A stretch of 64,000 nt of DNA, taken from positions 211,102 through 275,101 of IMG/VR virus record IMGVR_UViG_3300029258_002750; one strand, written 5' to 3'. The notes under the pieces were generated by a model. The model did no database searches. It was not told the origin of the DNA and worked only from the letters and a program-made list of their open reading frames with translations. Both the position numbers and the translations under genes were made by a program. This document shows, one piece after another, positions 24,448 through 32,955 of the stretch (positions are counted from its first letter, which is position 1; each line of letters opens with the position of its first letter).

Positions 24448-24987
24448 GTGAGCGGTATCGGCAAGCGTGGCCCCGGGGGCTTCACCGTTGGCGCGCTCCA
24501 GGGCGTGCACGGCAATGAGCGCATCTTCGTTGCGGACATGCTCCAGGTGCCCGGCGGCACGTGGCCGGTCTCGTCCAACGCCCCGGTGGTCGCCGACTCC
24601 CCTTACTCGGCGTCCGGGCTAGCTCGAGCCTTCGTGGACTCCGGCGAGACCGGCGCCGGGTTCTCGCTCCAGATCCCGTCCGGCGTGACGACGATGGTCG
24701 TGAGGATGCCGGGCCGAGCCGGGGACGCTCCCGCTGTGGCCGGTGACGTCGTTGTACGCCTGCACGCGCGGGTGGGAGCTGGCGCGTGGTCAGGTCCGGT
24801 TGCCTTGGGGATCCTCGCTGTGCCCAACGACCTGGCGCAGAGCTGGTCGTTCTCCACGACGCTCGCTGGTCTGAGCCTGAGCCCGGGTGACGATGCGCAG
24901 TTCATCGTGAGTAGGAATCCGGCCTCAGGCTCGGACACCCTGGTGGGCCGTTGGTTCCTCTACGAGCTGGGGGTCAACTTCGCATGA
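24448..24987 (+). CDS. Hypothetical beta-sandwich virion protein
   Basis: RBS GGAGG; GFSLQIP ... SR...SDTL fold pattern. Confidence 0.65.
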   Translation: MSGIGKRGPGGFTVGALQGVHGNERIFVADMLQVPGGTWPVSSNAPVVADSPYSASGLARAFVDSGETGAGFSLQIPSGVTTMVVRMPGRAGDAPAVAGDVVVRLHARVGAGAWSGPVALGILAVPNDLAQSWSFSTTLAGLSLSPGDDAQFIVSRNPASGSDTLVGRWFLYELGVNFA

Positions 24988-25829
24988 GCAGTCTCGGCAG
25001 ACCCGGCTACAGCACGCTCGGCACTCCAGTCGATCCTGCTTCGCCGTCTGGCATCCTGATCGACCCGACCACCGAGATCGGCGGATCTCCCGCGCTCAAC
25101 GATGTCCTCAAGGGCGACGGCCTGGGCGGCTGGACCGTTGGCCCGGCGCCCGGCGCTGGCGGCATCACCTACAAAGGCACGTGGGACGCTTCTACGAATA
25201 CTCCCGCGCTCGCTTCTGGTGTTGGCACCCCGGGCGAATACTACATCGTCGCGGTCGGCGGAACCACGACCCTCGACGGTGTCAGCCTGTGGACCGTGGG
25301 CGACTGGGCTATCTTCAACGGGACCGCCTGGCAGAAGATCGACAACGACACCAGGCCGGACTACGGACCGCTTGCTGCCGATCCGGCAGGGACTTCGCCG
25401 GACGGCTCCAAGTACTACAACACCGCGCTCGACATGGAGATGCGCTACGACGCCACCCGCGCGAAGTGGGTCTCTGTTGAGGCCAAGGTGTGCACCTTCT
25501 CGAACTCGGGCTTCTTCGGAACAGCGGCCGGGGCTTACTACCGTGGTATCGGGGCCGTCACCGGGGCAGGCGCTACGGGGTACCTCTTGCCGCACAACGC
25601 AACTGTGGTGGCAATGGGCTACACCAGGACGGACACGGATGCGGCAACCTTCGAGGTGATGGACGATGGGGCCTCGGTCGCTACACTGGCGTCCTCGGCC
25701 GCGTCTGGCAAGAGCACCGCACTGAACGTGGACATCGCCTCCGACAGCGTGCTGTCCCTGCGGAACCAGTCCGGGGGGAACACCACCTCCGGGGTCCAGG
25801 CGTGGGTGAAGGTCCGGTGGAGGGCGTAG
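24984..25829 (+). CDS. Fibre/adaptor protein with C-terminal module X
   Basis: YKGTWDASTNTP..GEYYIV..W.VGDW..W.KIDN fibre domain; ends KVRWRA. Confidence 0.75.
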   Translation: MSSLGRPGYSTLGTPVDPASPSGILIDPTTEIGGSPALNDVLKGDGLGGWTVGPAPGAGGITYKGTWDASTNTPALASGVGTPGEYYIVAVGGTTTLDGVSLWTVGDWAIFNGTAWQKIDNDTRPDYGPLAADPAGTSPDGSKYYNTALDMEMRYDATRAKWVSVEAKVCTFSNSGFFGTAAGAYYRGIGAVTGAGATGYLLPHNATVVAMGYTRTDTDAATFEVMDDGASVATLASSAASGKSTALNVDIASDSVLSLRNQSGGNTTSGVQAWVKVRWRA

Positions 25830-28206
25830 CGTGACGACCATCATCGCGAAGAACCAGACCGCAGGCGACCTCGCGCTCACGCGCTTGGTTGCGCCCGATG
25901 CCAAGATCCCGGCGAGCGGCCAGGCCCAGCTGACCGACTGGAACGCGCCCTACGAGATCACGATCGACCCGGAGCTGGTCGCCTACATCAACGCCGACCA
26001 GGTGCTCCTGAACATCGACGGCGTGGACCTGACCAAGGCGGAGAGCCTGACGGCCGCCGAGCAGAAGGTCGCGGGCACGAACATCGGCAACCTGGTCGAG
26101 GTTGTGGATGTTGGCGGAAGTGTCGCCGGACTACCGGCGCTGGACGGCTCCTTGCTCACCAATCTGGCGGCCTCCGGCGCCTACCGGCTTCCCCCGAACC
26201 TCGTGCTGGTGGATCCAGCCCAGCCAGCCCTGGTCGGGGTTCGATACCAGACATGGGCCGCCGCCGACACCTACGTGGCAACGCAAACACCGTCCTCCAC
26301 GAACAGGTGGGGCATCCAGATCACCGGCACGAACAGCGAGAACATCGTCGTGCGCCCGTGGGTGGTCATCGTGGGGATGCCAGAAGGGTCCACGAGGCTC
26401 ACCGGCAACCTGACCTCGACGGTCAGCTTCAACGGCACAGGCGACCCCACCATCGGGCTCGTGCGCGAGTGCGAAGTCGCCAGTCTCGCTTTCTCGGCCG
26501 CGAACGAGTGGACCATCTTCCACAACTGCAAGCTGACGGGAGGAACTCCCACCGGAGGTTGGTGCCGACTCGACCATTGCCGCGTGGATGGCGGCAACTA
26601 CTTCAACATGGATCTGATGCAGATCTACCGCAGCATCGTCGATGGTTCCGGCGGCGGCTTCCCGGACGTGGTCCAGGCGCACTGGACCAGGTTCGCGTCG
26701 AACTACACCCTGCGGGGCGGCAACTTCAACTTCTGCGAGATCTTCATCGGCGGCACCACAACCTACCTGGCCGGGAGCTACACGCTCTGGAACTGCGTCA
26801 GCTACGCTGCGCTGAACGCGGCCAGCGCCGGGCATCGGATCAGGATTCTCAACACCATCCTGGTGGGAAACCCCACGATCACCCTCAACCCCGGTGACCT
26901 GACCACGCGCTCGGTCGTGGGGGACTTCGCCGTCTCTAACACAGGCGGCAACTGGACCAACGAGGGCGACTTCTACGACAACACGGCCTCCGGCCTCGCG
27001 GCGGATGAGGTCCAGGCGGCCATCGACGAGATCGTGGCCGGTCTGCCCACTGGCGATGTCGTCGGGCCGGGAAGCTCGACTACCAACAACGTGCCCCAGT
27101 TTGCGGACACGTCCGGCAAGCTCCTGAAGGATGGGCTGACGCCTGGCGGCGCAAATGGTCTGGCCACGCTCAACTCGGGCAGCAAGGTACCGCTGATCCA
27201 GCTCCCAGCTTCGCAGACGCCAGCTGTGGACACGATTCCCGTCTCTGGCTCGGTTCAGCCCACGATCAACCCAGGTTGGCTCCCGGGCGCGTCCGAGAGC
27301 GCGCAGGGCGCTATCGAGATCGCCACCCAGACCGAGACCGACACCGGCACGGACAATACGCGTGCTGTTACTCCGCTCAAGCTAGCTGGTCGAACGGCTA
27401 CAGAAACGCGCGCTGGTATTGCCGAGCTTGCGACTCAGGCCGAGACGGATACCGGTACAGACGATGCCAGGATCGTCACCCCGCTCAAGCTCAAGGGAAG
27501 GGTGCCGCGCACGGACTTCGGCGCATCGGCCAGTGACCCAGCCGGGTCTCCTGTTGACGGGGACATCTACTACAACACGGCGCTCGACAAGGAAATGCGA
27601 TACGACGCGACGAGAGCTAAGTGGCTTTCGGTTGCCGAGGCCGCCTACCAGTTCGGCCGCAACGGAGACACGCCTAGCGGCTCGTTCTATCGCGGTATCA
27701 ACGGGCTTGCGTTTTCTGCTACGCGGGGGCTGACTATGCCGCATGACGGAACAATTGTCGCCCTGGGCTATCACCGGGATGATTCAGATGCTGCAACCTT
27801 TGCGATTAGAAACAATACGACAGCAAGCGTCGTTGTGACAGTCGCCTCGACCGCTAACAAGGGAGTTGACTCGTCACTGAACGCTAACTTCTCGGCCCAG
27901 GACGTTCTCGCTCCCGGCAACAATACGGGCTCTAATACGACCTCCAATGTAATCGGCTGGTTCAAGGTCAAATGGAGGGTGTAGCGTATGACTACGATCA
28001 TCGCTAAGAATCAGACGGCCGGTGACCTGTTGCTGACATTGCTGTCAGTACCAGACACTGTGATTCCAGCCTCCGGCCAAGTCCAGTTGACGGATTGGAA
28101 CACAGTCACAGAAATTCAAAACGATCCCGAACTGCTTGCTTACATTAACAGCGATCAGGTGCTGCTGAACATCGACGGCGAGGACCAGACCAAGGCGCAG
28201 AGTCTT
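25353..28206 (+). repeat. Two diverged copies (about 25353-26049 and 27508-28206) of a unit spanning gene end, stop and next gene start
   Basis: YYNTALD.EMRYDATRAKW...W.KV.WR* then TTIIAKNQTAGDL...IPASGQ.QLTDWN...DQVLLNIDG in both copies. Confidence 0.85.
25831..27984 (+). CDS. Tail fibre/spike: module Y, beta-helix-like region, fibre repeats, module X
   Basis: Starts TTIIAKNQTAGDL; two ATQ.ETDTGTD..R.VTPLKL repeats; ends KVKWRV. Confidence 0.8.
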   Translation: MTTIIAKNQTAGDLALTRLVAPDAKIPASGQAQLTDWNAPYEITIDPELVAYINADQVLLNIDGVDLTKAESLTAAEQKVAGTNIGNLVEVVDVGGSVAGLPALDGSLLTNLAASGAYRLPPNLVLVDPAQPALVGVRYQTWAAADTYVATQTPSSTNRWGIQITGTNSENIVVRPWVVIVGMPEGSTRLTGNLTSTVSFNGTGDPTIGLVRECEVASLAFSAANEWTIFHNCKLTGGTPTGGWCRLDHCRVDGGNYFNMDLMQIYRSIVDGSGGGFPDVVQAHWTRFASNYTLRGGNFNFCEIFIGGTTTYLAGSYTLWNCVSYAALNAASAGHRIRILNTILVGNPTITLNPGDLTTRSVVGDFAVSNTGGNWTNEGDFYDNTASGLAADEVQAAIDEIVAGLPTGDVVGPGSSTTNNVPQFADTSGKLLKDGLTPGGANGLATLNSGSKVPLIQLPASQTPAVDTIPVSGSVQPTINPGWLPGASESAQGAIEIATQTETDTGTDNTRAVTPLKLAGRTATETRAGIAELATQAETDTGTDDARIVTPLKLKGRVPRTDFGASASDPAGSPVDGDIYYNTALDKEMRYDATRAKWLSVAEAAYQFGRNGDTPSGSFYRGINGLAFSATRGLTMPHDGTIVALGYHRDDSDAATFAIRNNTTASVVVTVASTANKGVDSSLNANFSAQDVLAPGNNTGSNTTSNVIGWFKVKWRV

Positions 28207-28950
28207 GCGGCCCAGTCCACAGTGTCCTTTCCGGTTGACGACACGACCGAACTCGTCCGCGATCCTGTCGATACAACGAAGCGACTACGGCTAGACGCTG
28301 GGGCGGTCACGACAGGTACAACGAGGATAGTCTCTGTTCCAGACAAGAACGTCACGCTGGACGACGCGGCAGATTCCCGAGATCCGAACACGCACGCGAG
28401 TAGCCACCGGAACGGCGGCACTGACGAAGTAGCCACGGCAACCCCGGCCGCGAACGCGATCCCCAAGGCGGACGGTTCAGCCAAGCTCGATGGATGGGTT
28501 ACTGCCGATGTCGCTGGACCTTCGTCAGCAACGGACAACGCTGTTGCTAGGTTTGACGGTACGACGGGGAAGGTGGTCCAGGGGTCGGACGTAGTCATTG
28601 ACGACGACGGCGCTGTCTCCAACGTCGAGCGGATCGCCTACAAGACGGAGATCAACAACGGAAACAGCGGCGCGACGAAGACTATCGACTGGACAGCCGG
28701 TCAGAAGCAACGTGTGACCATGACAGCCGACTGCACGTTCTCCTTCACGGCGCCCGCCGGGCCTACCAACCTGTTGCTCAAGTTGGTACAGGATGTCACC
28801 GGCGGACACGACGCGACCTGGCCGGGTTCCGTGCTATGGGCGAAAGGCAAGGCGCCGAACCTCACAAACGGCGGCGATGCCATCGATATCGTCACGTTCT
28901 ACTACGACGGGACGAACTACTTCGGCGTGGCGAGCCTGGACTTCAGCTAG
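27988..28950 (+). CDS. Fibre protein with N-terminal module Y
   Basis: MTTIIAKNQTAGDL; GPSSATDNAVARFDGTTGK; TIDWTAG...TWPGSVLW..G.AP tip domain. Confidence 0.8.
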   Translation: MTTIIAKNQTAGDLLLTLLSVPDTVIPASGQVQLTDWNTVTEIQNDPELLAYINSDQVLLNIDGEDQTKAQSLAAQSTVSFPVDDTTELVRDPVDTTKRLRLDAGAVTTGTTRIVSVPDKNVTLDDAADSRDPNTHASSHRNGGTDEVATATPAANAIPKADGSAKLDGWVTADVAGPSSATDNAVARFDGTTGKVVQGSDVVIDDDGAVSNVERIAYKTEINNGNSGATKTIDWTAGQKQRVTMTADCTFSFTAPAGPTNLLLKLVQDVTGGHDATWPGSVLWAKGKAPNLTNGGDAIDIVTFYYDGTNYFGVASLDFS

Positions 28951-30654
28951 ATGCCTACCTGGGGACGAACTACTGCCAATCCGACGGAAACGTCGGTCGA
29001 CTGGTGTCGAGCGATGGGCGGGACTTCGCCCAACGTCGACTACATGAAGTTGACCTCGGTCTCGGTCTACGTCGGGTCGCCGCACACCAACCAGGTCCGG
29101 GTCGCCGTGTACCAGGGCGGCGCGCTTGACGATCCGTCCGGCGCAACGCTGGTCTACGACTTCGGCCTCACGTCCGGTTCCGCTACCGATCAGTTCTTGA
29201 CGCTGTCTGTCGTTGGCGACATCGACCTCGCTGCGAACGAGGTCACCTGGATCGCGGTTAAGGGCAACGACAGCGGATTCGATGTCGTCTACCAGAACAG
29301 TTCCGCCGGGGCCGGTGACTTCCAGACGGCGCGAGGTAGGTTCGAGTCTAGCGGCATTTCCTCAAACGAGAACACCGCTTACCCGAGCACGTTCCCGGCT
29401 GGCGGCTCGTTCAGCGACTTCTGGTACAGCTTCTACCTGACCTACATGGTGGAGCCGCCCGATGAGCCTGACGAGCCCTCCAACATCCTGAAGACAGAGG
29501 CACTGACCGAGCAGAGCACGAGCAGTGGCACCTTCGTGGACGTACCTAATTCGTCGCTGACGGTGACACCTACGCGCGACGAGGATGTGTGGCTCGTTTT
29601 CGTGAGCGGGGTGATGCGCTCGTCCAGTACAGCCGAGACCTCGGCCGAGATGCGGCTGCTCATCGACGGGTCCGAGGTCGACTACTGGGGGCATCAGGTA
29701 GATCCGACCACCACGCCGAACGGCGCGGGGTTCTTGATCTTCGACCGTATTACCGGGGTCACGGGCGACCAGGTGATCCAGCCGCAGTTCCGGGCCGCCG
29801 CAGGCACCACGTACGTCAGCCAGCTGCGCGTGGTGGCGGCCCGGCTACCACATGGCGCCGATCTCCAGTTCGCTCGGTCGAACTCAACCGTTCAGACCAC
29901 GGGGGTGAATCAGCAGATCCAGGCTCTCACCTTCACGCCGTCGAGCGCTGGCAACTACTTCGTGTTTGGCAAGGCGTCCATCCAGGAAGCTCCGGGCGGG
30001 AGCACAGCACAGATCTGGGTGCTCGGGGCCGATAGCACTCAGCACCCGAACTCGCCGTCCGGCGTCCACTACTCGAACGCGAGAGACTGCTGGAGCCCCT
30101 TCTCCACAGCGTATCGTGAGAGCTTGGGTAGCGGCTCGCAGACCATCAGTCTGCGGTTCACGTCGAGCGCCTCGGGCACGGAGGGTAGTCAGCACAGGTA
30201 CCGGAAGCTGATGACCTTCCGCGAAGACGTGTGGGACCTGGTGCAGTACGACCTTGAGGCTGCGCAGACGACGACCACGTCCACGTCCTACGTGCAGAAG
30301 AACGCGATCACCACAACTGCGCCGTCAGAGGAGCGGGAGTACCTGGTGATTCAGTCCATGCGCATCTCGGGCGACACGACTGGATCGGGCCGCAAGTCCG
30401 GGGTGATCGCAGAAGACTCCTCCGCCGTGCTGCTCACGAATCATCGGATCAGCCGCAATGGCAGCGCCGACCAGGGCTACCACCACATCGCCGGGGTCGC
30501 GGACGTCAGGACGCGGTCGGTCTCGGCCATCTGCCGTAACGGCGGGATCTCCCCCGACGGCATCACGCTCCAGGCAGCAGAGAGCGTCATCATCGTACTC
30601 AGGTATCCCGCCCTCCAGCGGTGGAACAGTCCGTTCTTTGGAACGGTGGCGTAG
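28951..30654 (+). CDS. Putative receptor-binding/virion protein
   Basis: Ser/Thr-rich beta domains; abuts the upstream fibre gene. Confidence 0.65.
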   Translation: MPTWGRTTANPTETSVDWCRAMGGTSPNVDYMKLTSVSVYVGSPHTNQVRVAVYQGGALDDPSGATLVYDFGLTSGSATDQFLTLSVVGDIDLAANEVTWIAVKGNDSGFDVVYQNSSAGAGDFQTARGRFESSGISSNENTAYPSTFPAGGSFSDFWYSFYLTYMVEPPDEPDEPSNILKTEALTEQSTSSGTFVDVPNSSLTVTPTRDEDVWLVFVSGVMRSSSTAETSAEMRLLIDGSEVDYWGHQVDPTTTPNGAGFLIFDRITGVTGDQVIQPQFRAAAGTTYVSQLRVVAARLPHGADLQFARSNSTVQTTGVNQQIQALTFTPSSAGNYFVFGKASIQEAPGGSTAQIWVLGADSTQHPNSPSGVHYSNARDCWSPFSTAYRESLGSGSQTISLRFTSSASGTEGSQHRYRKLMTFREDVWDLVQYDLEAAQTTTTSTSYVQKNAITTTAPSEEREYLVIQSMRISGDTTGSGRKSGVIAEDSSAVLLTNHRISRNGSADQGYHHIAGVADVRTRSVSAICRNGGISPDGITLQAAESVIIVLRYPALQRWNSPFFGTVA

Positions 30655-31739: not shown

Positions 31740-32344
31740 TCGTCGTAGTCCTCTCGACCCCCAGGTCGTTCCACCTGTCCTCGTGGTTGATCAAGATCGG
31801 GACGGGCTACCCGGCCAGCCACGCGTCCCTGCACATCATGGGACGCGGCCTGTTCGAGGGCGAGCGGATGGTCTTCGAGGCAACTGCGCACGGGATCGGC
31901 CTGGTCCACCCGTCGCGGTGGGACAAGCTGAACCGGCCGGTCGCGGCCTACGAGATGGTCGAGCAGCACGAGGTCATCGGAAGGGCCGCGTTCCGGGAGA
32001 TGTGGAAGAACCTGGGCGCGGATTACGACTGGAAGGGCGCGTTCAGCTTCGCGTTGCGGATCATCGTCGCCAAGCTCTATGGCGTGACGGTCCCAGTGGA
32101 GGATACCCCAGAGAAGATGTTCTGTTCTGAGCTGGTGGCAAGGTGGCTGAACGAGGTGCAACTCCGGCTCGACCAACCCCAAGACGCGCTCCGCCCTGAC
32201 GACGTATCGCCAGCGGGATTGTCAGCCGTGCTGGAGCGTTCCGAGCTTTTTCGGAGCGTGCCATGCGAACCCTCGTTGTCAGCGATCTTCACCTCGGAGC
32301 CCCCGGACGCCTCCCCCAAGCGGACGGAGAACTCTGCAACTTGA
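31736..32344 (+). CDS. Permuted papain-like NlpC/P60 amidase (YiiX/YebB-like)
   Basis: SHASL...FEA...G.DYD...FCSELVA, with His before Cys. Confidence 0.8.
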   Translation: MIVVVLSTPRSFHLSSWLIKIGTGYPASHASLHIMGRGLFEGERMVFEATAHGIGLVHPSRWDKLNRPVAAYEMVEQHEVIGRAAFREMWKNLGADYDWKGAFSFALRIIVAKLYGVTVPVEDTPEKMFCSELVARWLNEVQLRLDQPQDALRPDDVSPAGLSAVLERSELFRSVPCEPSLSAIFTSEPPDASPKRTENSAT

Positions 32345-32955
32345 TCCACCGGGGCGACTGGGGGCAGATCGTCCTCCTGGGCGACGTCTTCGATCTGTGG
32401 GCCGCGCCCTTCCATAAGATCGCGAGGATGCACGCAGCGGTGCTGGCGGTGCTCGAGGCAGCCGAGTGCACCGTCACCTACGTTCCCGGCAATCACGACG
32501 ACGCGTTTCGCGGCCTCAGCTACCTCAACTCGTTCCAGACCGTCTGGCCCTACTATCGCTTCAGCTCGGGCGGGAAGTGGGTTGTCGCAGCGCACGGAGA
32601 TACCTACGACGAGTTTGAGGGTGTTCCGTCCAGGTTCGGTGCGTGGGCTTCTCGACTGGCCGACCGCGTTGCCCGCTGGTTCGCTGGCCCGGGTGTCTCG
32701 ATCACCAGGAGCTTCCGGTACTCGTATGCCGAGCGAGGACCGGGGCGGTCGAGCTACGTTGCCCCGATCCACAGCAAGGCGGCGGCCGACCTCGACGGGG
32801 ACATCGTCCTCATCGGCCATACCCACGTCCCTACGACCCGCGAGGAGCACGGCGAGAAGATCCTGGTGAACACAGGCGATTTCGGCCCGGAGCACATGAC
32901 CTACGTGGTCGTTGAGGACGGCCGGGCGGAGCTGCGCTCAATCGACCCGTCCTGA
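32263..32955 (+). CDS. Calcineurin-like metallophosphoesterase, LpxH/LpxH2-like
   Basis: SDLHLG, LLGDVFDLW, YVPGNHD, AHGD, GHTH. Confidence 0.85.
   Translation: MRTLVVSDLHLGAPGRLPQADGELCNLIHRGDWGQIVLLGDVFDLWAAPFHKIARMHAAVLAVLEAAECTVTYVPGNHDDAFRGLSYLNSFQTVWPYYRFSSGGKWVVAAHGDTYDEFEGVPSRFGAWASRLADRVARWFAGPGVSITRSFRYSYAERGPGRSSYVAPIHSKAAADLDGDIVLIGHTHVPTTREEHGEKILVNTGDFGPEHMTYVVVEDGRAELRSIDPS

What the first reader, a model, noticed from the sequence alone, without database searches (positions are those of the whole stretch)
24984..28950. Repeat unit straddling gene boundaries suggests head-to-tail daisy-chained fibre proteins
Seen: an approximately 700-bp unit occurs twice. It consists of C-terminal module X (YYNTALD.EMRYDATRAKW...KV.WR*), the stop, and N-terminal module Y of the next gene (TTIIAKNQTAGDL...LNIDG). 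The result is gene1[..X], gene2[Y..X], gene3[Y..]. Established: branched receptor-binding systems (G7C, CBA120) use dedicated docking domains. Inference: X binds Y, so each protein plugs into the previous one and the chain can be extended by inserting more Y..X genes.
Basis: partly seen in the sequence, partly recalled or inferred. Interest (0 to 1): 0.7.

Follow-up and report, generated by a model that had tools for sequence, protein, structure and literature searches.

The report
Plug-and-socket modules linking phage tail fibres
Three neighbouring tail-fibre genes of an uncultured 275-kb phage share a two-part module that spans each gene boundary, and it recurs in this arrangement across uncultured phages, which suggests, but does not prove, that each fibre protein plugs into the one before it.

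Summary
A unit of about 705 bp occurs twice (25353-26055 and 27508-28212). It consists of C-terminal module X, a stop codon, and N-terminal module Y of the next gene, giving g1[..X], g2[Y..X], g3[Y..].

- **X** is confidently predicted (pLDDT 95) as a C1q/TNF-like jelly-roll head, the trimeric C-terminal knob seen in BclA, C1q and the phage 7-7-1 long tail fibre.
- **Y** is a small alpha/beta domain (pLDDT 93). It has no relative in Pfam, PHROGs or PDB, and none in 50,697 cultured phage genomes.
- **Linkage:** Y defines at least 1,628 protein clusters and is N-terminal in all 150 best hits. In 11 virus records all 20 Y copies lie directly after an X. All 9 contexts reached by searching with Y alone showed the same.
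- **Only the junction is conserved:** X and Y are alignable between loci in about 80% of pairs, the flanking parts of the same proteins in 4-10%.
- **Variants:** Relatives carry one to three junctions. X-only, Y-only and minimal Y-X proteins also exist.
- **Limits:** X also occurs without Y, in secreted Flavobacteriaceae proteins and in last-in-chain fibre genes.

X-Y binding remains an inference, because the complex prediction gave no verdict. I read this as a new variant of the known multi-protein fibre principle.

The parts
24984..25829 (+). g1, the first fibre protein (281 aa from the ATG; 292 aa if the TTG at 24951 is used). It has no Y and ends in X1.
   Evidence: ORF and translation. 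Residues 70-133 match 'minor tail protein' PHROGs. The ATG overlaps the stop of the upstream ORF 24448-24987.
25353..25826 (+). X1. A beta-hairpin neck (YYNTALD..MRYDATRAKW) is followed by a C1q/TNF-like jelly-roll head (jelly roll about 25473-25826) and ends in ..KVRWRA.
   Evidence: 47% identity to X2. AF2 model pLDDT 94.9. Fold matches at Z 8-10 to BclA C-terminal domain, C1q heads and the 7-7-1 long tail fibre tip.
25819..25833 (+). Junction 1: GGAGG (inside the Trp-Arg codons of X1), TAG stop at 25827-25829, one base, then the GTG start of g2 at 25831.
   Evidence: Sequence read directly. An SD-like motif lies in the last codons of X in 46 of 49 related junctions.
25831..27984 (+). g2, the middle fibre protein (717 aa) with architecture Y2 ... 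X2.
   Evidence: ORF and translation.
25831..26055 (+). Y2, a small N-terminal alpha/beta domain (TTIIAKNQTAGDL...LNIDG).
   Evidence: 75% identity to Y3. AF2 model pLDDT 93.1. No Pfam, PHROG or PDB relative.
27253..27525 (+). Trimeric fibre-shaft repeats in g2 (aa 475-565), homologous to T4 gp34 and gp12. This span includes the 69-nt direct repeat at 27315-27383 and 27423-27491.
   Evidence: phmmer against PDB sequences: long tail fibre proximal subunit E=2.2e-39, gp12 E=2.6e-8. PHROG 972 and 910. Repeat D6.
27508..27981 (+). X2, the second copy of the neck plus C1q/TNF-like head, ending in ..KVKWRV.
27974..27990 (+). Junction 2: GGAGG, TAG stop at 27982-27984, CGT, then the ATG start of g3 at 27988.
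   Evidence: Sequence read directly.
27988..28950 (+). g3, the last fibre protein in the chain (320 aa). It has Y3 (27988-28212), a linker, and a different C-terminal tip domain (about 28609-28941), with no X.
   Evidence: ORF and translation. The C-terminal 100 aa match tail-fibre PHROGs such as phrog_9017, E=2.9e-11.
28951..30654 (+). g4, the abutting downstream gene (567 aa), with no family match. It may belong to the same fibre operon but has neither X nor Y.
   Evidence: the g3 stop and g4 start are contiguous.

Best explanation
X and Y form a plug-and-socket pair that joins successive tail-fibre proteins. X is the C-terminal neck plus C1q/TNF-like head that closes, and probably nucleates, a trimeric fibre. 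Y is the N-terminal domain of the protein encoded immediately downstream, and it docks on that head. In this phage g1 would carry g2 (a longer fibre with T4 gp34/gp12-like shaft repeats), and g2 would carry g3, which ends in a different tip domain. The genes are tightly packed, with an SD-like GGAGG inside the last codons of X. The partners are therefore probably made together and in similar amounts. Inserting or deleting Y..X genes changes the number of links. Shown here: the module anatomy, the predicted folds, and the near-obligate X-stop-Y adjacency across very divergent uncultured phages while the rest of both proteins is exchanged. Inferred: the physical contact, its geometry (end-to-end or branched), and whether the order of links is enforced by pair specificity.
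For: 1. The repeat and the grammar [..X][Y..X][Y..] are real.
2. In the 150 best of 1,628 Y clusters, Y always starts within the first 8 residues. X sits at the extreme C-terminus.
3. Counted over whole records, all 20 Y copies in 11 virus records lie directly downstream of an X end, and the three complete records have equal numbers of X and Y.
4. In contexts found with Y alone, 9 of 9 have an X-ending gene immediately upstream.
5. In viral and metagenome contigs, 49 of 62 non-redundant X-ending genes are followed by an HMM-detectable Y, and several of the rest by a Y-like N-terminus seen by eye.
6. Among 44 junctions, X is alignable between loci in 84% of pairs and Y in 78%. The 150 aa before X are alignable in only 10% and the 150 aa after Y in only 4%. 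Selection therefore keeps the junction together while everything else is shuffled.
7. Stand-alone X-only (~150 aa), Y-only (76-83 aa) and minimal Y-X (236 aa) proteins occur, always in X-then-Y order.
8. Chains of 1, 2 and 3 junctions occur in relatives.
9. X has the fold of trimeric C-terminal fibre heads, and g2 has trimeric T4 fibre-shaft repeats.
10. From established knowledge: in the T4 long tail fibre (genes 34-37), T2/S16 gp37-gp38 and TP901-1 BppU-BppL, the product of the downstream gene attaches by its N-terminus to the C-terminal end of the upstream one.
Against: - No direct evidence of binding exists. The only complex prediction returned no verdict.
- X is not specific to this role. 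It ends secreted Flavobacteriaceae proteins and alphaproteobacterial prophage-like fibres with no Y nearby (33 of 36 X copies in bacterial genome contigs). It also ends last-in-chain genes that are followed by an unrelated ~130-aa protein.
- Three Y genes follow non-X C-termini.
- Y similarity between loci tracks the X of its own protein (r=0.74) no less than the X of the upstream protein (r=0.61), so there is no partner-specific co-evolution signal.
- Y2 and Y3 are 75% identical. It is therefore unclear what would stop g3 binding g1 directly, or g2 binding itself.
Confidence: 0.6

Rival explanations
1. X and Y do not touch. X is only the trimerisation or receptor-binding head of its own fibre. 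Y anchors its own fibre to a common site elsewhere, on the baseplate or another fibre. The adjacency reflects tandem fibre genes inherited as a cassette.
For: X occurs widely without Y and has the fold of self-sufficient trimeric heads. Y tracks the X of its own gene at least as well as the upstream X. Three Y genes follow other C-termini.
Against: This does not explain why all 20 Y copies in 11 records, and 9 of 9 contexts found with Y alone, sit directly after an X. It does not explain why first genes in a chain lack Y and last genes often lack X. It does not explain why the junction survives when 90-96% of flank pairs are unrelated. It gives no role to Y-only or X-only proteins.
Confidence: 0.2
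2. Y is an assembly (chaperone-like) domain for the upstream head. It binds X transiently to help it trimerise, as tail-fibre assembly proteins encoded downstream of fibre genes do, but the two proteins are not joined in the mature virion.
For: The gene order and tight coupling match the fibre-then-chaperone order of lambda, Mu and P2 (established knowledge). Y-only proteins of 76-83 aa exist.
Against: Most Y proteins are long and fibre-like, up to 1,991 aa. X folds without Y in cellular proteins and in last-in-chain genes.
Confidence: 0.1
3. The conserved junction is mainly a homology patch that promotes recombinational exchange of fibre cassettes, with no protein-level partnership.
For: Flanks are heavily shuffled around a conserved core. 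The in-genome repeat is also detectable at DNA level.
Against: Between loci the conservation is at protein level (20-55% identity), too diverged for homologous recombination. Both modules are predicted to be well-folded domains.
Confidence: 0.05

Closest known systems
T4 long tail fibre (gp34-gp35-gp36-gp37) and the T2/S16 gp37-gp38 adhesin cap
   Same: Consecutive genes encode proteins that are joined end to end, with the N-terminus of the downstream product on the C-terminal end of the upstream trimer. g2 carries shaft repeats homologous to gp34 and gp12.
   Different: The joints are not homologous. Here one domain pair is reused at every joint, the socket is a C1q/TNF-like head, and the number of links varies between relatives.
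Branched receptor-binding complexes: G7C gp66/gp63.1, CBA120 TSP1-4, the Klebsiella phage 'anchor-branch' system and DT57C LtfA/LtfB
   Same: Several receptor-binding proteins are attached to one another through dedicated modules, and the genes are adjacent and modular.
   Different: In those systems docking uses T4 gp10-like or XD domains, or conserved peptides, in the N-terminal part of the anchor protein. No such domains were found here. Here the proposed socket is the C-terminal head.
C1q/TNF-like trimeric heads (BclA C-terminal domain, C1q, collagen X NC1, PRD1 P5 knob, phage 7-7-1 long tail fibre tip, PDB 9rkv)
   Same: The predicted fold and the C-terminal position after a fibrous stalk. 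In phage 7-7-1 the C-terminal triple jelly roll ends the long tail fibre (PMC12796354).
   Different: No sequence family match. None of these heads is known to me to carry a further fibre protein.
TP901-1 BppU-BppL baseplate
   Same: The C-terminal domain of one protein holds the N-terminus of the receptor-binding protein encoded by the next gene (established knowledge, not tested here).
   Different: Unrelated domains, a single fixed joint, and a siphophage baseplate context.

Membership tests
G7C/CBA120-type docking modules (T4 gp10-like / XD domains) | Sequence or fold homology to T4 gp10-like/XD domains | tested here: not met
   No such hit for g1-g4 or for 75 X and Y sequences in Pfam and PHROGs, in PDB sequences or by fold search.
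G7C/CBA120-type docking modules (T4 gp10-like / XD domains) | [quoted passage not shown] | tested here: not met
   The shared module of the upstream protein is at its extreme C-terminus.
T4-type multi-protein tail fibre | Trimeric fibre-shaft repeats homologous to gp34/gp12 | tested here: met
   g2 aa 475-565, E=2.2e-39 to the long tail fibre proximal subunit.
T4-type multi-protein tail fibre | Consecutive genes whose products are joined C-terminus to N-terminus | not testable with these tools
   The gene order fits. The physical joint is not shown, since the complex prediction gave no verdict.
C1q/TNF-like head domains | Jelly-roll fold of the C1q/TNF type | tested here: met
   Model pLDDT 94.9. 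Z 8-10 over about 105-113 residues to BclA-C, C1q, collagen X NC1 and the 7-7-1 fibre tip, with the top ranks almost all of this fold class.
C1q/TNF-like head domains | Homotrimer at the C-terminal end of a fibrous stalk | tested here: inconclusive
   The C-terminal position after shaft repeats is met. The trimeric state was not established.
C1q/TNF-like head domains | Match to the curated sequence families (Pfam C1q, TNF, BclA_C) | tested here: not met
   No Pfam hit for 43 X sequences apart from one sub-threshold NPCBM and one chance hit. A 'faint' precomputed BclA_C hit is on record for one Y-bearing relative.
Tail-fibre assembly chaperones (Tfa, gp38-like) | Homology to known Tfa or gp38 families | tested here: not met
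   Y has no Pfam or PHROG family and no structural relative.

The most novel reading that the evidence does not exclude
X and Y are a self-compatible connector standard used by a large group of uncultured phages to build fibres of variable length or branching. Y..X proteins act as extenders that could even polymerise head to tail. X-only proteins act as starters or sockets, and Y-only proteins act as caps that terminate the chain. Host range would then be re-wired by adding or removing links.
Probability: 0.2. Interest if true: 0.8.

Novelty: new variant of a known kind. Interest (0 to 1): 0.6.

Why it matters
If Y docks on X, this is a compact, portable connector of about 160 plus 75 residues that nature reuses serially to stack receptor-binding proteins. 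It would explain how phages known only from metagenomes assemble multi-protein fibres. It would give a rule for reading their fibre loci: gene order would equal physical order, with links countable from sequence. It would also offer a candidate adaptor for studying modular fibres in laboratory phages. Y appears to be a previously undescribed domain family with at least 1,628 clusters and no match in the Pfam and PHROG copies searched. The claim is directly testable with two small recombinant domains.

Tried and rejected
- **Complex prediction.** X1 x3 with Y2 x3 returned 'no answer'. Two of the three runs were under the mark and the controls were not folded, so this counts neither for nor against binding.
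- **Partner co-evolution test.** On 14 middle genes, Y against the upstream X gave r=0.61 and Y against its own X gave r=0.74. The bootstrap interval of the difference includes 0, so the test does not discriminate.
- **Arg codon choice.** I asked whether the terminal Trp-Arg uses AGR (SD-forming) codons more often when Y follows. AGR is used about as often with Y as without.
- **Collection scans with Y alignments.** These failed for lack of a conserved 7-10 column stretch. I used record-wide searches and exact look-ups of Y-cluster representatives instead.
- **Cultured phages.** Megablast of the locus and tblastn of two X and two Y queries against 50,697 records found nothing.
- **Structural relatives of Y.** Foldseek against PDB, VIA-align wide, AFDB clusters and the ESM Atlas gave nothing above noise.
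- **Context upstream of an X-only chain start (record G006).** Only a tail or hub-like protein about 5 kb upstream was found, which was uninformative about what the first link attaches to.
- **Read-through or gene fusion at the junction.** Rejected because frames, spacings and stop codons vary between loci.

Full report
**Setting.** The window is the last 64 kb of a 275,101-bp IMG/VR virus record with direct terminal repeats, estimated 100% complete. GC content is 64%. Upstream genes include a tape-measure-like protein and a gp6/J-like baseplate wedge protein, so this is a large tailed phage with a complex baseplate. It has no near or protein-level relative for this locus among 50,697 deposited phage genomes.

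**The observation.** Four abutting plus-strand genes cover the region:
- g1, 24984-25829
- g2, 25831-27984
- g3, 27988-28950
- g4, 28951-30654

The last 159 residues of g1 and g2 (module X) are 47% identical, E=3e-43. The first 75 residues of g2 and g3 (module Y) are 75% identical, E=2e-30. The DNA repeat is offset by 2155-2157 nt and is 61% identical over about 703 nt. The units are 25353-26055 and 27508-28212. They are the only X and Y copies in the genome.

At both junctions the Trp-Arg codons that end X read TGG-AGG. This places GGAGG 7-9 nt before the next start codon.

**What the modules are.**
- **X.** With a 43-sequence alignment, X models at pLDDT 94.9. It has a short beta-hairpin neck carrying the invariant Y-D-x-x-R-x-K-W motif, followed by a jelly roll. 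Residues 46-163 of the model superpose at Z 8-10 on BclA C-terminal domains, C1q heads, collagen X NC1 and TNF-family ligands. They also superpose on residues 475-583 of the phage 7-7-1 tail fibre. The 7-7-1 paper describes the fibre's C-terminal part (its residues 473-587) as a triple jelly roll that ends the long tail fibre trimer (PMC12796354). All of these are trimeric heads at the C-terminal end of fibrous stalks.
- **g2 shaft.** Just before X2, g2 has shaft repeats homologous to T4 gp34 and gp12, E=2.2e-39. g2 is therefore a trimeric fibre protein.
- **Y.** Y models at pLDDT 93.1 as a small alpha/beta domain. It has no relative by sequence in PDB, Pfam or PHROGs for any of 32 members. 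It has none by fold either.
- **X in sequence libraries.** X has no Pfam family and only weak matches to mostly unnamed PHROGs.

**Does the junction recur?**
- **First relatives.** Single-sequence scans already showed that three independent viral contigs carry X immediately before Y.
- **X-seeded scan.** An X-profile scan of IMG/VR gave 44 loci. HMM scans showed the X-stop-Y junction in most of them, with chains up to [..X][Y..X][Y..X][Y..].
- **Counts with improved profiles.** 52 non-redundant X-ending genes are followed by Y and 46 are not. Splitting by source is informative. In viral and metagenome contigs 49 of 62 are followed by Y. Several of the other 13 are followed by a gene whose N-terminus looks Y-like by eye, and four by a conserved ~130-aa protein that seems to mark the end of the cluster.
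- **Bacterial genome contigs.** Only 3 of 36 are followed by Y. Two of these three are in a Myxococcales MAG. Many of the remainder are secreted Flavobacteriaceae proteins with signal peptides; one sampled locus lies beside acyl-carrier-protein and FabF-like genes. Others are alphaproteobacterial prophage-like fibres. X is therefore a general head domain that exists independently of Y.

**The Y side is the sharper test.**
- **Size and position.** A profile search of 1.84 billion representatives found 1,628 Y clusters at E<=1e-3. In all 150 best hits Y starts within the first 8 residues.
- **Y with X in one protein.** 41 of 149 representatives also carry X, 34 of them at the extreme C-terminus. 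One is a 236-aa protein that is nothing but Y plus X.
- **Contexts found with Y alone.** For nine such representatives whose DNA could be fetched, chosen without reference to their neighbours, the upstream gene ends in X every time.
- **Whole records.** Searching eleven virus records with both profiles, all 20 Y copies lie directly downstream of an X end. The three complete records have equal numbers of X and Y.
- **Exceptions.** Three divergent Y genes follow a different C-terminal domain or a small gene.

**Is this only synteny?** No. Among 44 non-redundant junctions, X is alignable between loci (BLASTP E<=1e-3) in 84% of pairs and Y in 78%. The 150 residues preceding X in the same protein are alignable in only 10% of pairs, and the 150 residues following Y in only 4%.
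- The nearest distinct relative of the window (L005) shares only X and Y with g1 and g3 and lacks a middle gene.
- Proteins that carry X range from ~150-aa X-only proteins to an open frame of 1,544 aa. Proteins that carry Y range from 76-aa Y-only proteins to 1,991 aa.
- The junction is therefore the unit that selection keeps intact while everything around it is exchanged.
- Because conservation between loci is at protein level (20-55% identity), and both modules are predicted to be well folded, a mere recombination-homology patch is not a sufficient explanation.

**Mechanism.** The best reading is a plug-and-socket pair. The C-terminal head X of one fibre trimer carries the N-terminal domain Y of the product of the next gene. 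This reading accounts for several features:
- the polarity of the grammar: in the window and the relatives whose genes I read (L005, L007), the first gene of a chain lacks Y, and last genes may lack X
- the one-to-one adjacency
- the stand-alone X-only and Y-only proteins
- the variable number of links (1-3) among relatives

It also matches the established logic of the T4 long tail fibre, T2/S16 gp37-gp38 and TP901-1 BppU-BppL, where the downstream product attaches by its N-terminus to the C-terminal end of the upstream one (my knowledge, not tested here).

Binding itself, the geometry, and ordering specificity are inferences. Two points weigh against a strictly ordered chain. Y2 and Y3 are 75% identical. 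There is also no partner-specific co-variation: Y against upstream X gave r=0.61 and Y against own X gave r=0.74.

**Comparison with known systems.** The locus works like known multi-protein fibres, but it is not a member of the G7C/CBA120 docking-domain families. No gp10-like or XD domains were found, and the proposed socket is C-terminal. X belongs by predicted fold to the C1q/TNF-like heads but not to any curated sequence family. Y appears to be a previously undescribed domain family.

**Verdict.**
The genomic coupling it predicted is strong on the Y side, X is not a dedicated docking domain, and binding is untested.
- Novelty: a new variant of a known kind.
- Confidence that X|Y is a selected cross-gene functional unit is about 0.9. 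Confidence that Y physically docks on the preceding X is about 0.6.

Noticed in passing
window 25819-25823 and 27974-27978: The conserved terminal Trp-Arg of X is encoded TGG-AGG, giving GGAGG 7-9 nt before the next start codon. An SD-like motif is present in the last codons of X in 46 of 49 related junctions. AGR codons are about as common in X genes not followed by Y, so this is not specific to the junction.
   Followed up: yes
L043 2038-3618; L053 2069-3613: In these low-GC (27-29%) phage contigs the cluster reads X-only (145-149 aa), Y..X (291-297 aa), then Y-only (76-77 aa). Both modules therefore also exist as stand-alone proteins, in the same order. Another 83-aa Y-only protein (P0089) follows a 148-aa gene.
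   Followed up: partly
L057, L061, L062, L069, L074, L082, L084 (bacterial genome contigs): X ends secreted Flavobacteriaceae proteins of about 200-400 aa with signal peptides. In L061 the gene lies near acyl-carrier-protein and FabF-like genes, and in some loci two such genes sit in tandem. This is a cellular use of the same head domain, without Y.
   Followed up: partly
L027 4142-, L028 3425-, L030 3422-, L033 3456-: Where X ends the last fibre gene, a conserved protein of about 130-135 aa follows (..AEYP..SG..F.C..). It could be an assembly factor or a marker of the end of the cluster. It was not searched against the family libraries here.
   Followed up: no
L054, L055 (MAG Myxococcales bacterium DT_69): Contigs binned with a Myxococcales MAG carry X|Y junctions, with X 49-52% identical to g1's X (X1). 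Together with the 64% GC of the phage, this hints at a Myxococcota host. They could also be phage contigs mis-binned into the MAG.
   Followed up: no
window 27315-27383 and 27423-27491: A 69-nt direct repeat (72% identity) lies within g2. It corresponds to two successive T4 gp34/gp12-like shaft repeats (..ATQ.ETDTGTD..R.VTPLKL).
   Followed up: yes
window 25070-25349 (g1 aa 70-133): The motif YKGTWDASTN...GEYYIV...GDWAIFNGTAWQKI matches 'minor tail protein' PHROGs. The N-terminal ~60 aa of g1, which should attach the chain to the virion, match nothing.
   Followed up: no
window 32263-32955: This ORF has a weak match to NinI-like Ser/Thr phosphatase (phrog_246, E=2.9e-6), just downstream of the fibre cluster.
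   Followed up: no
L089 2428-2634; contigs carrying P0008: Related phage contigs encode a ribosomal protein S21-like gene and a prohead protease a few kb upstream of the junction. In another contig a ~1,985-aa protein with intein and LAGLIDADG hits lies two genes upstream.
   Followed up: no
L038 3451-5647: A Y-starting ORF of 116 aa overlaps a 623-aa ORF in another frame that contains an internal X. This is probably one gene split by a frameshift or an assembly error.
   Followed up: no
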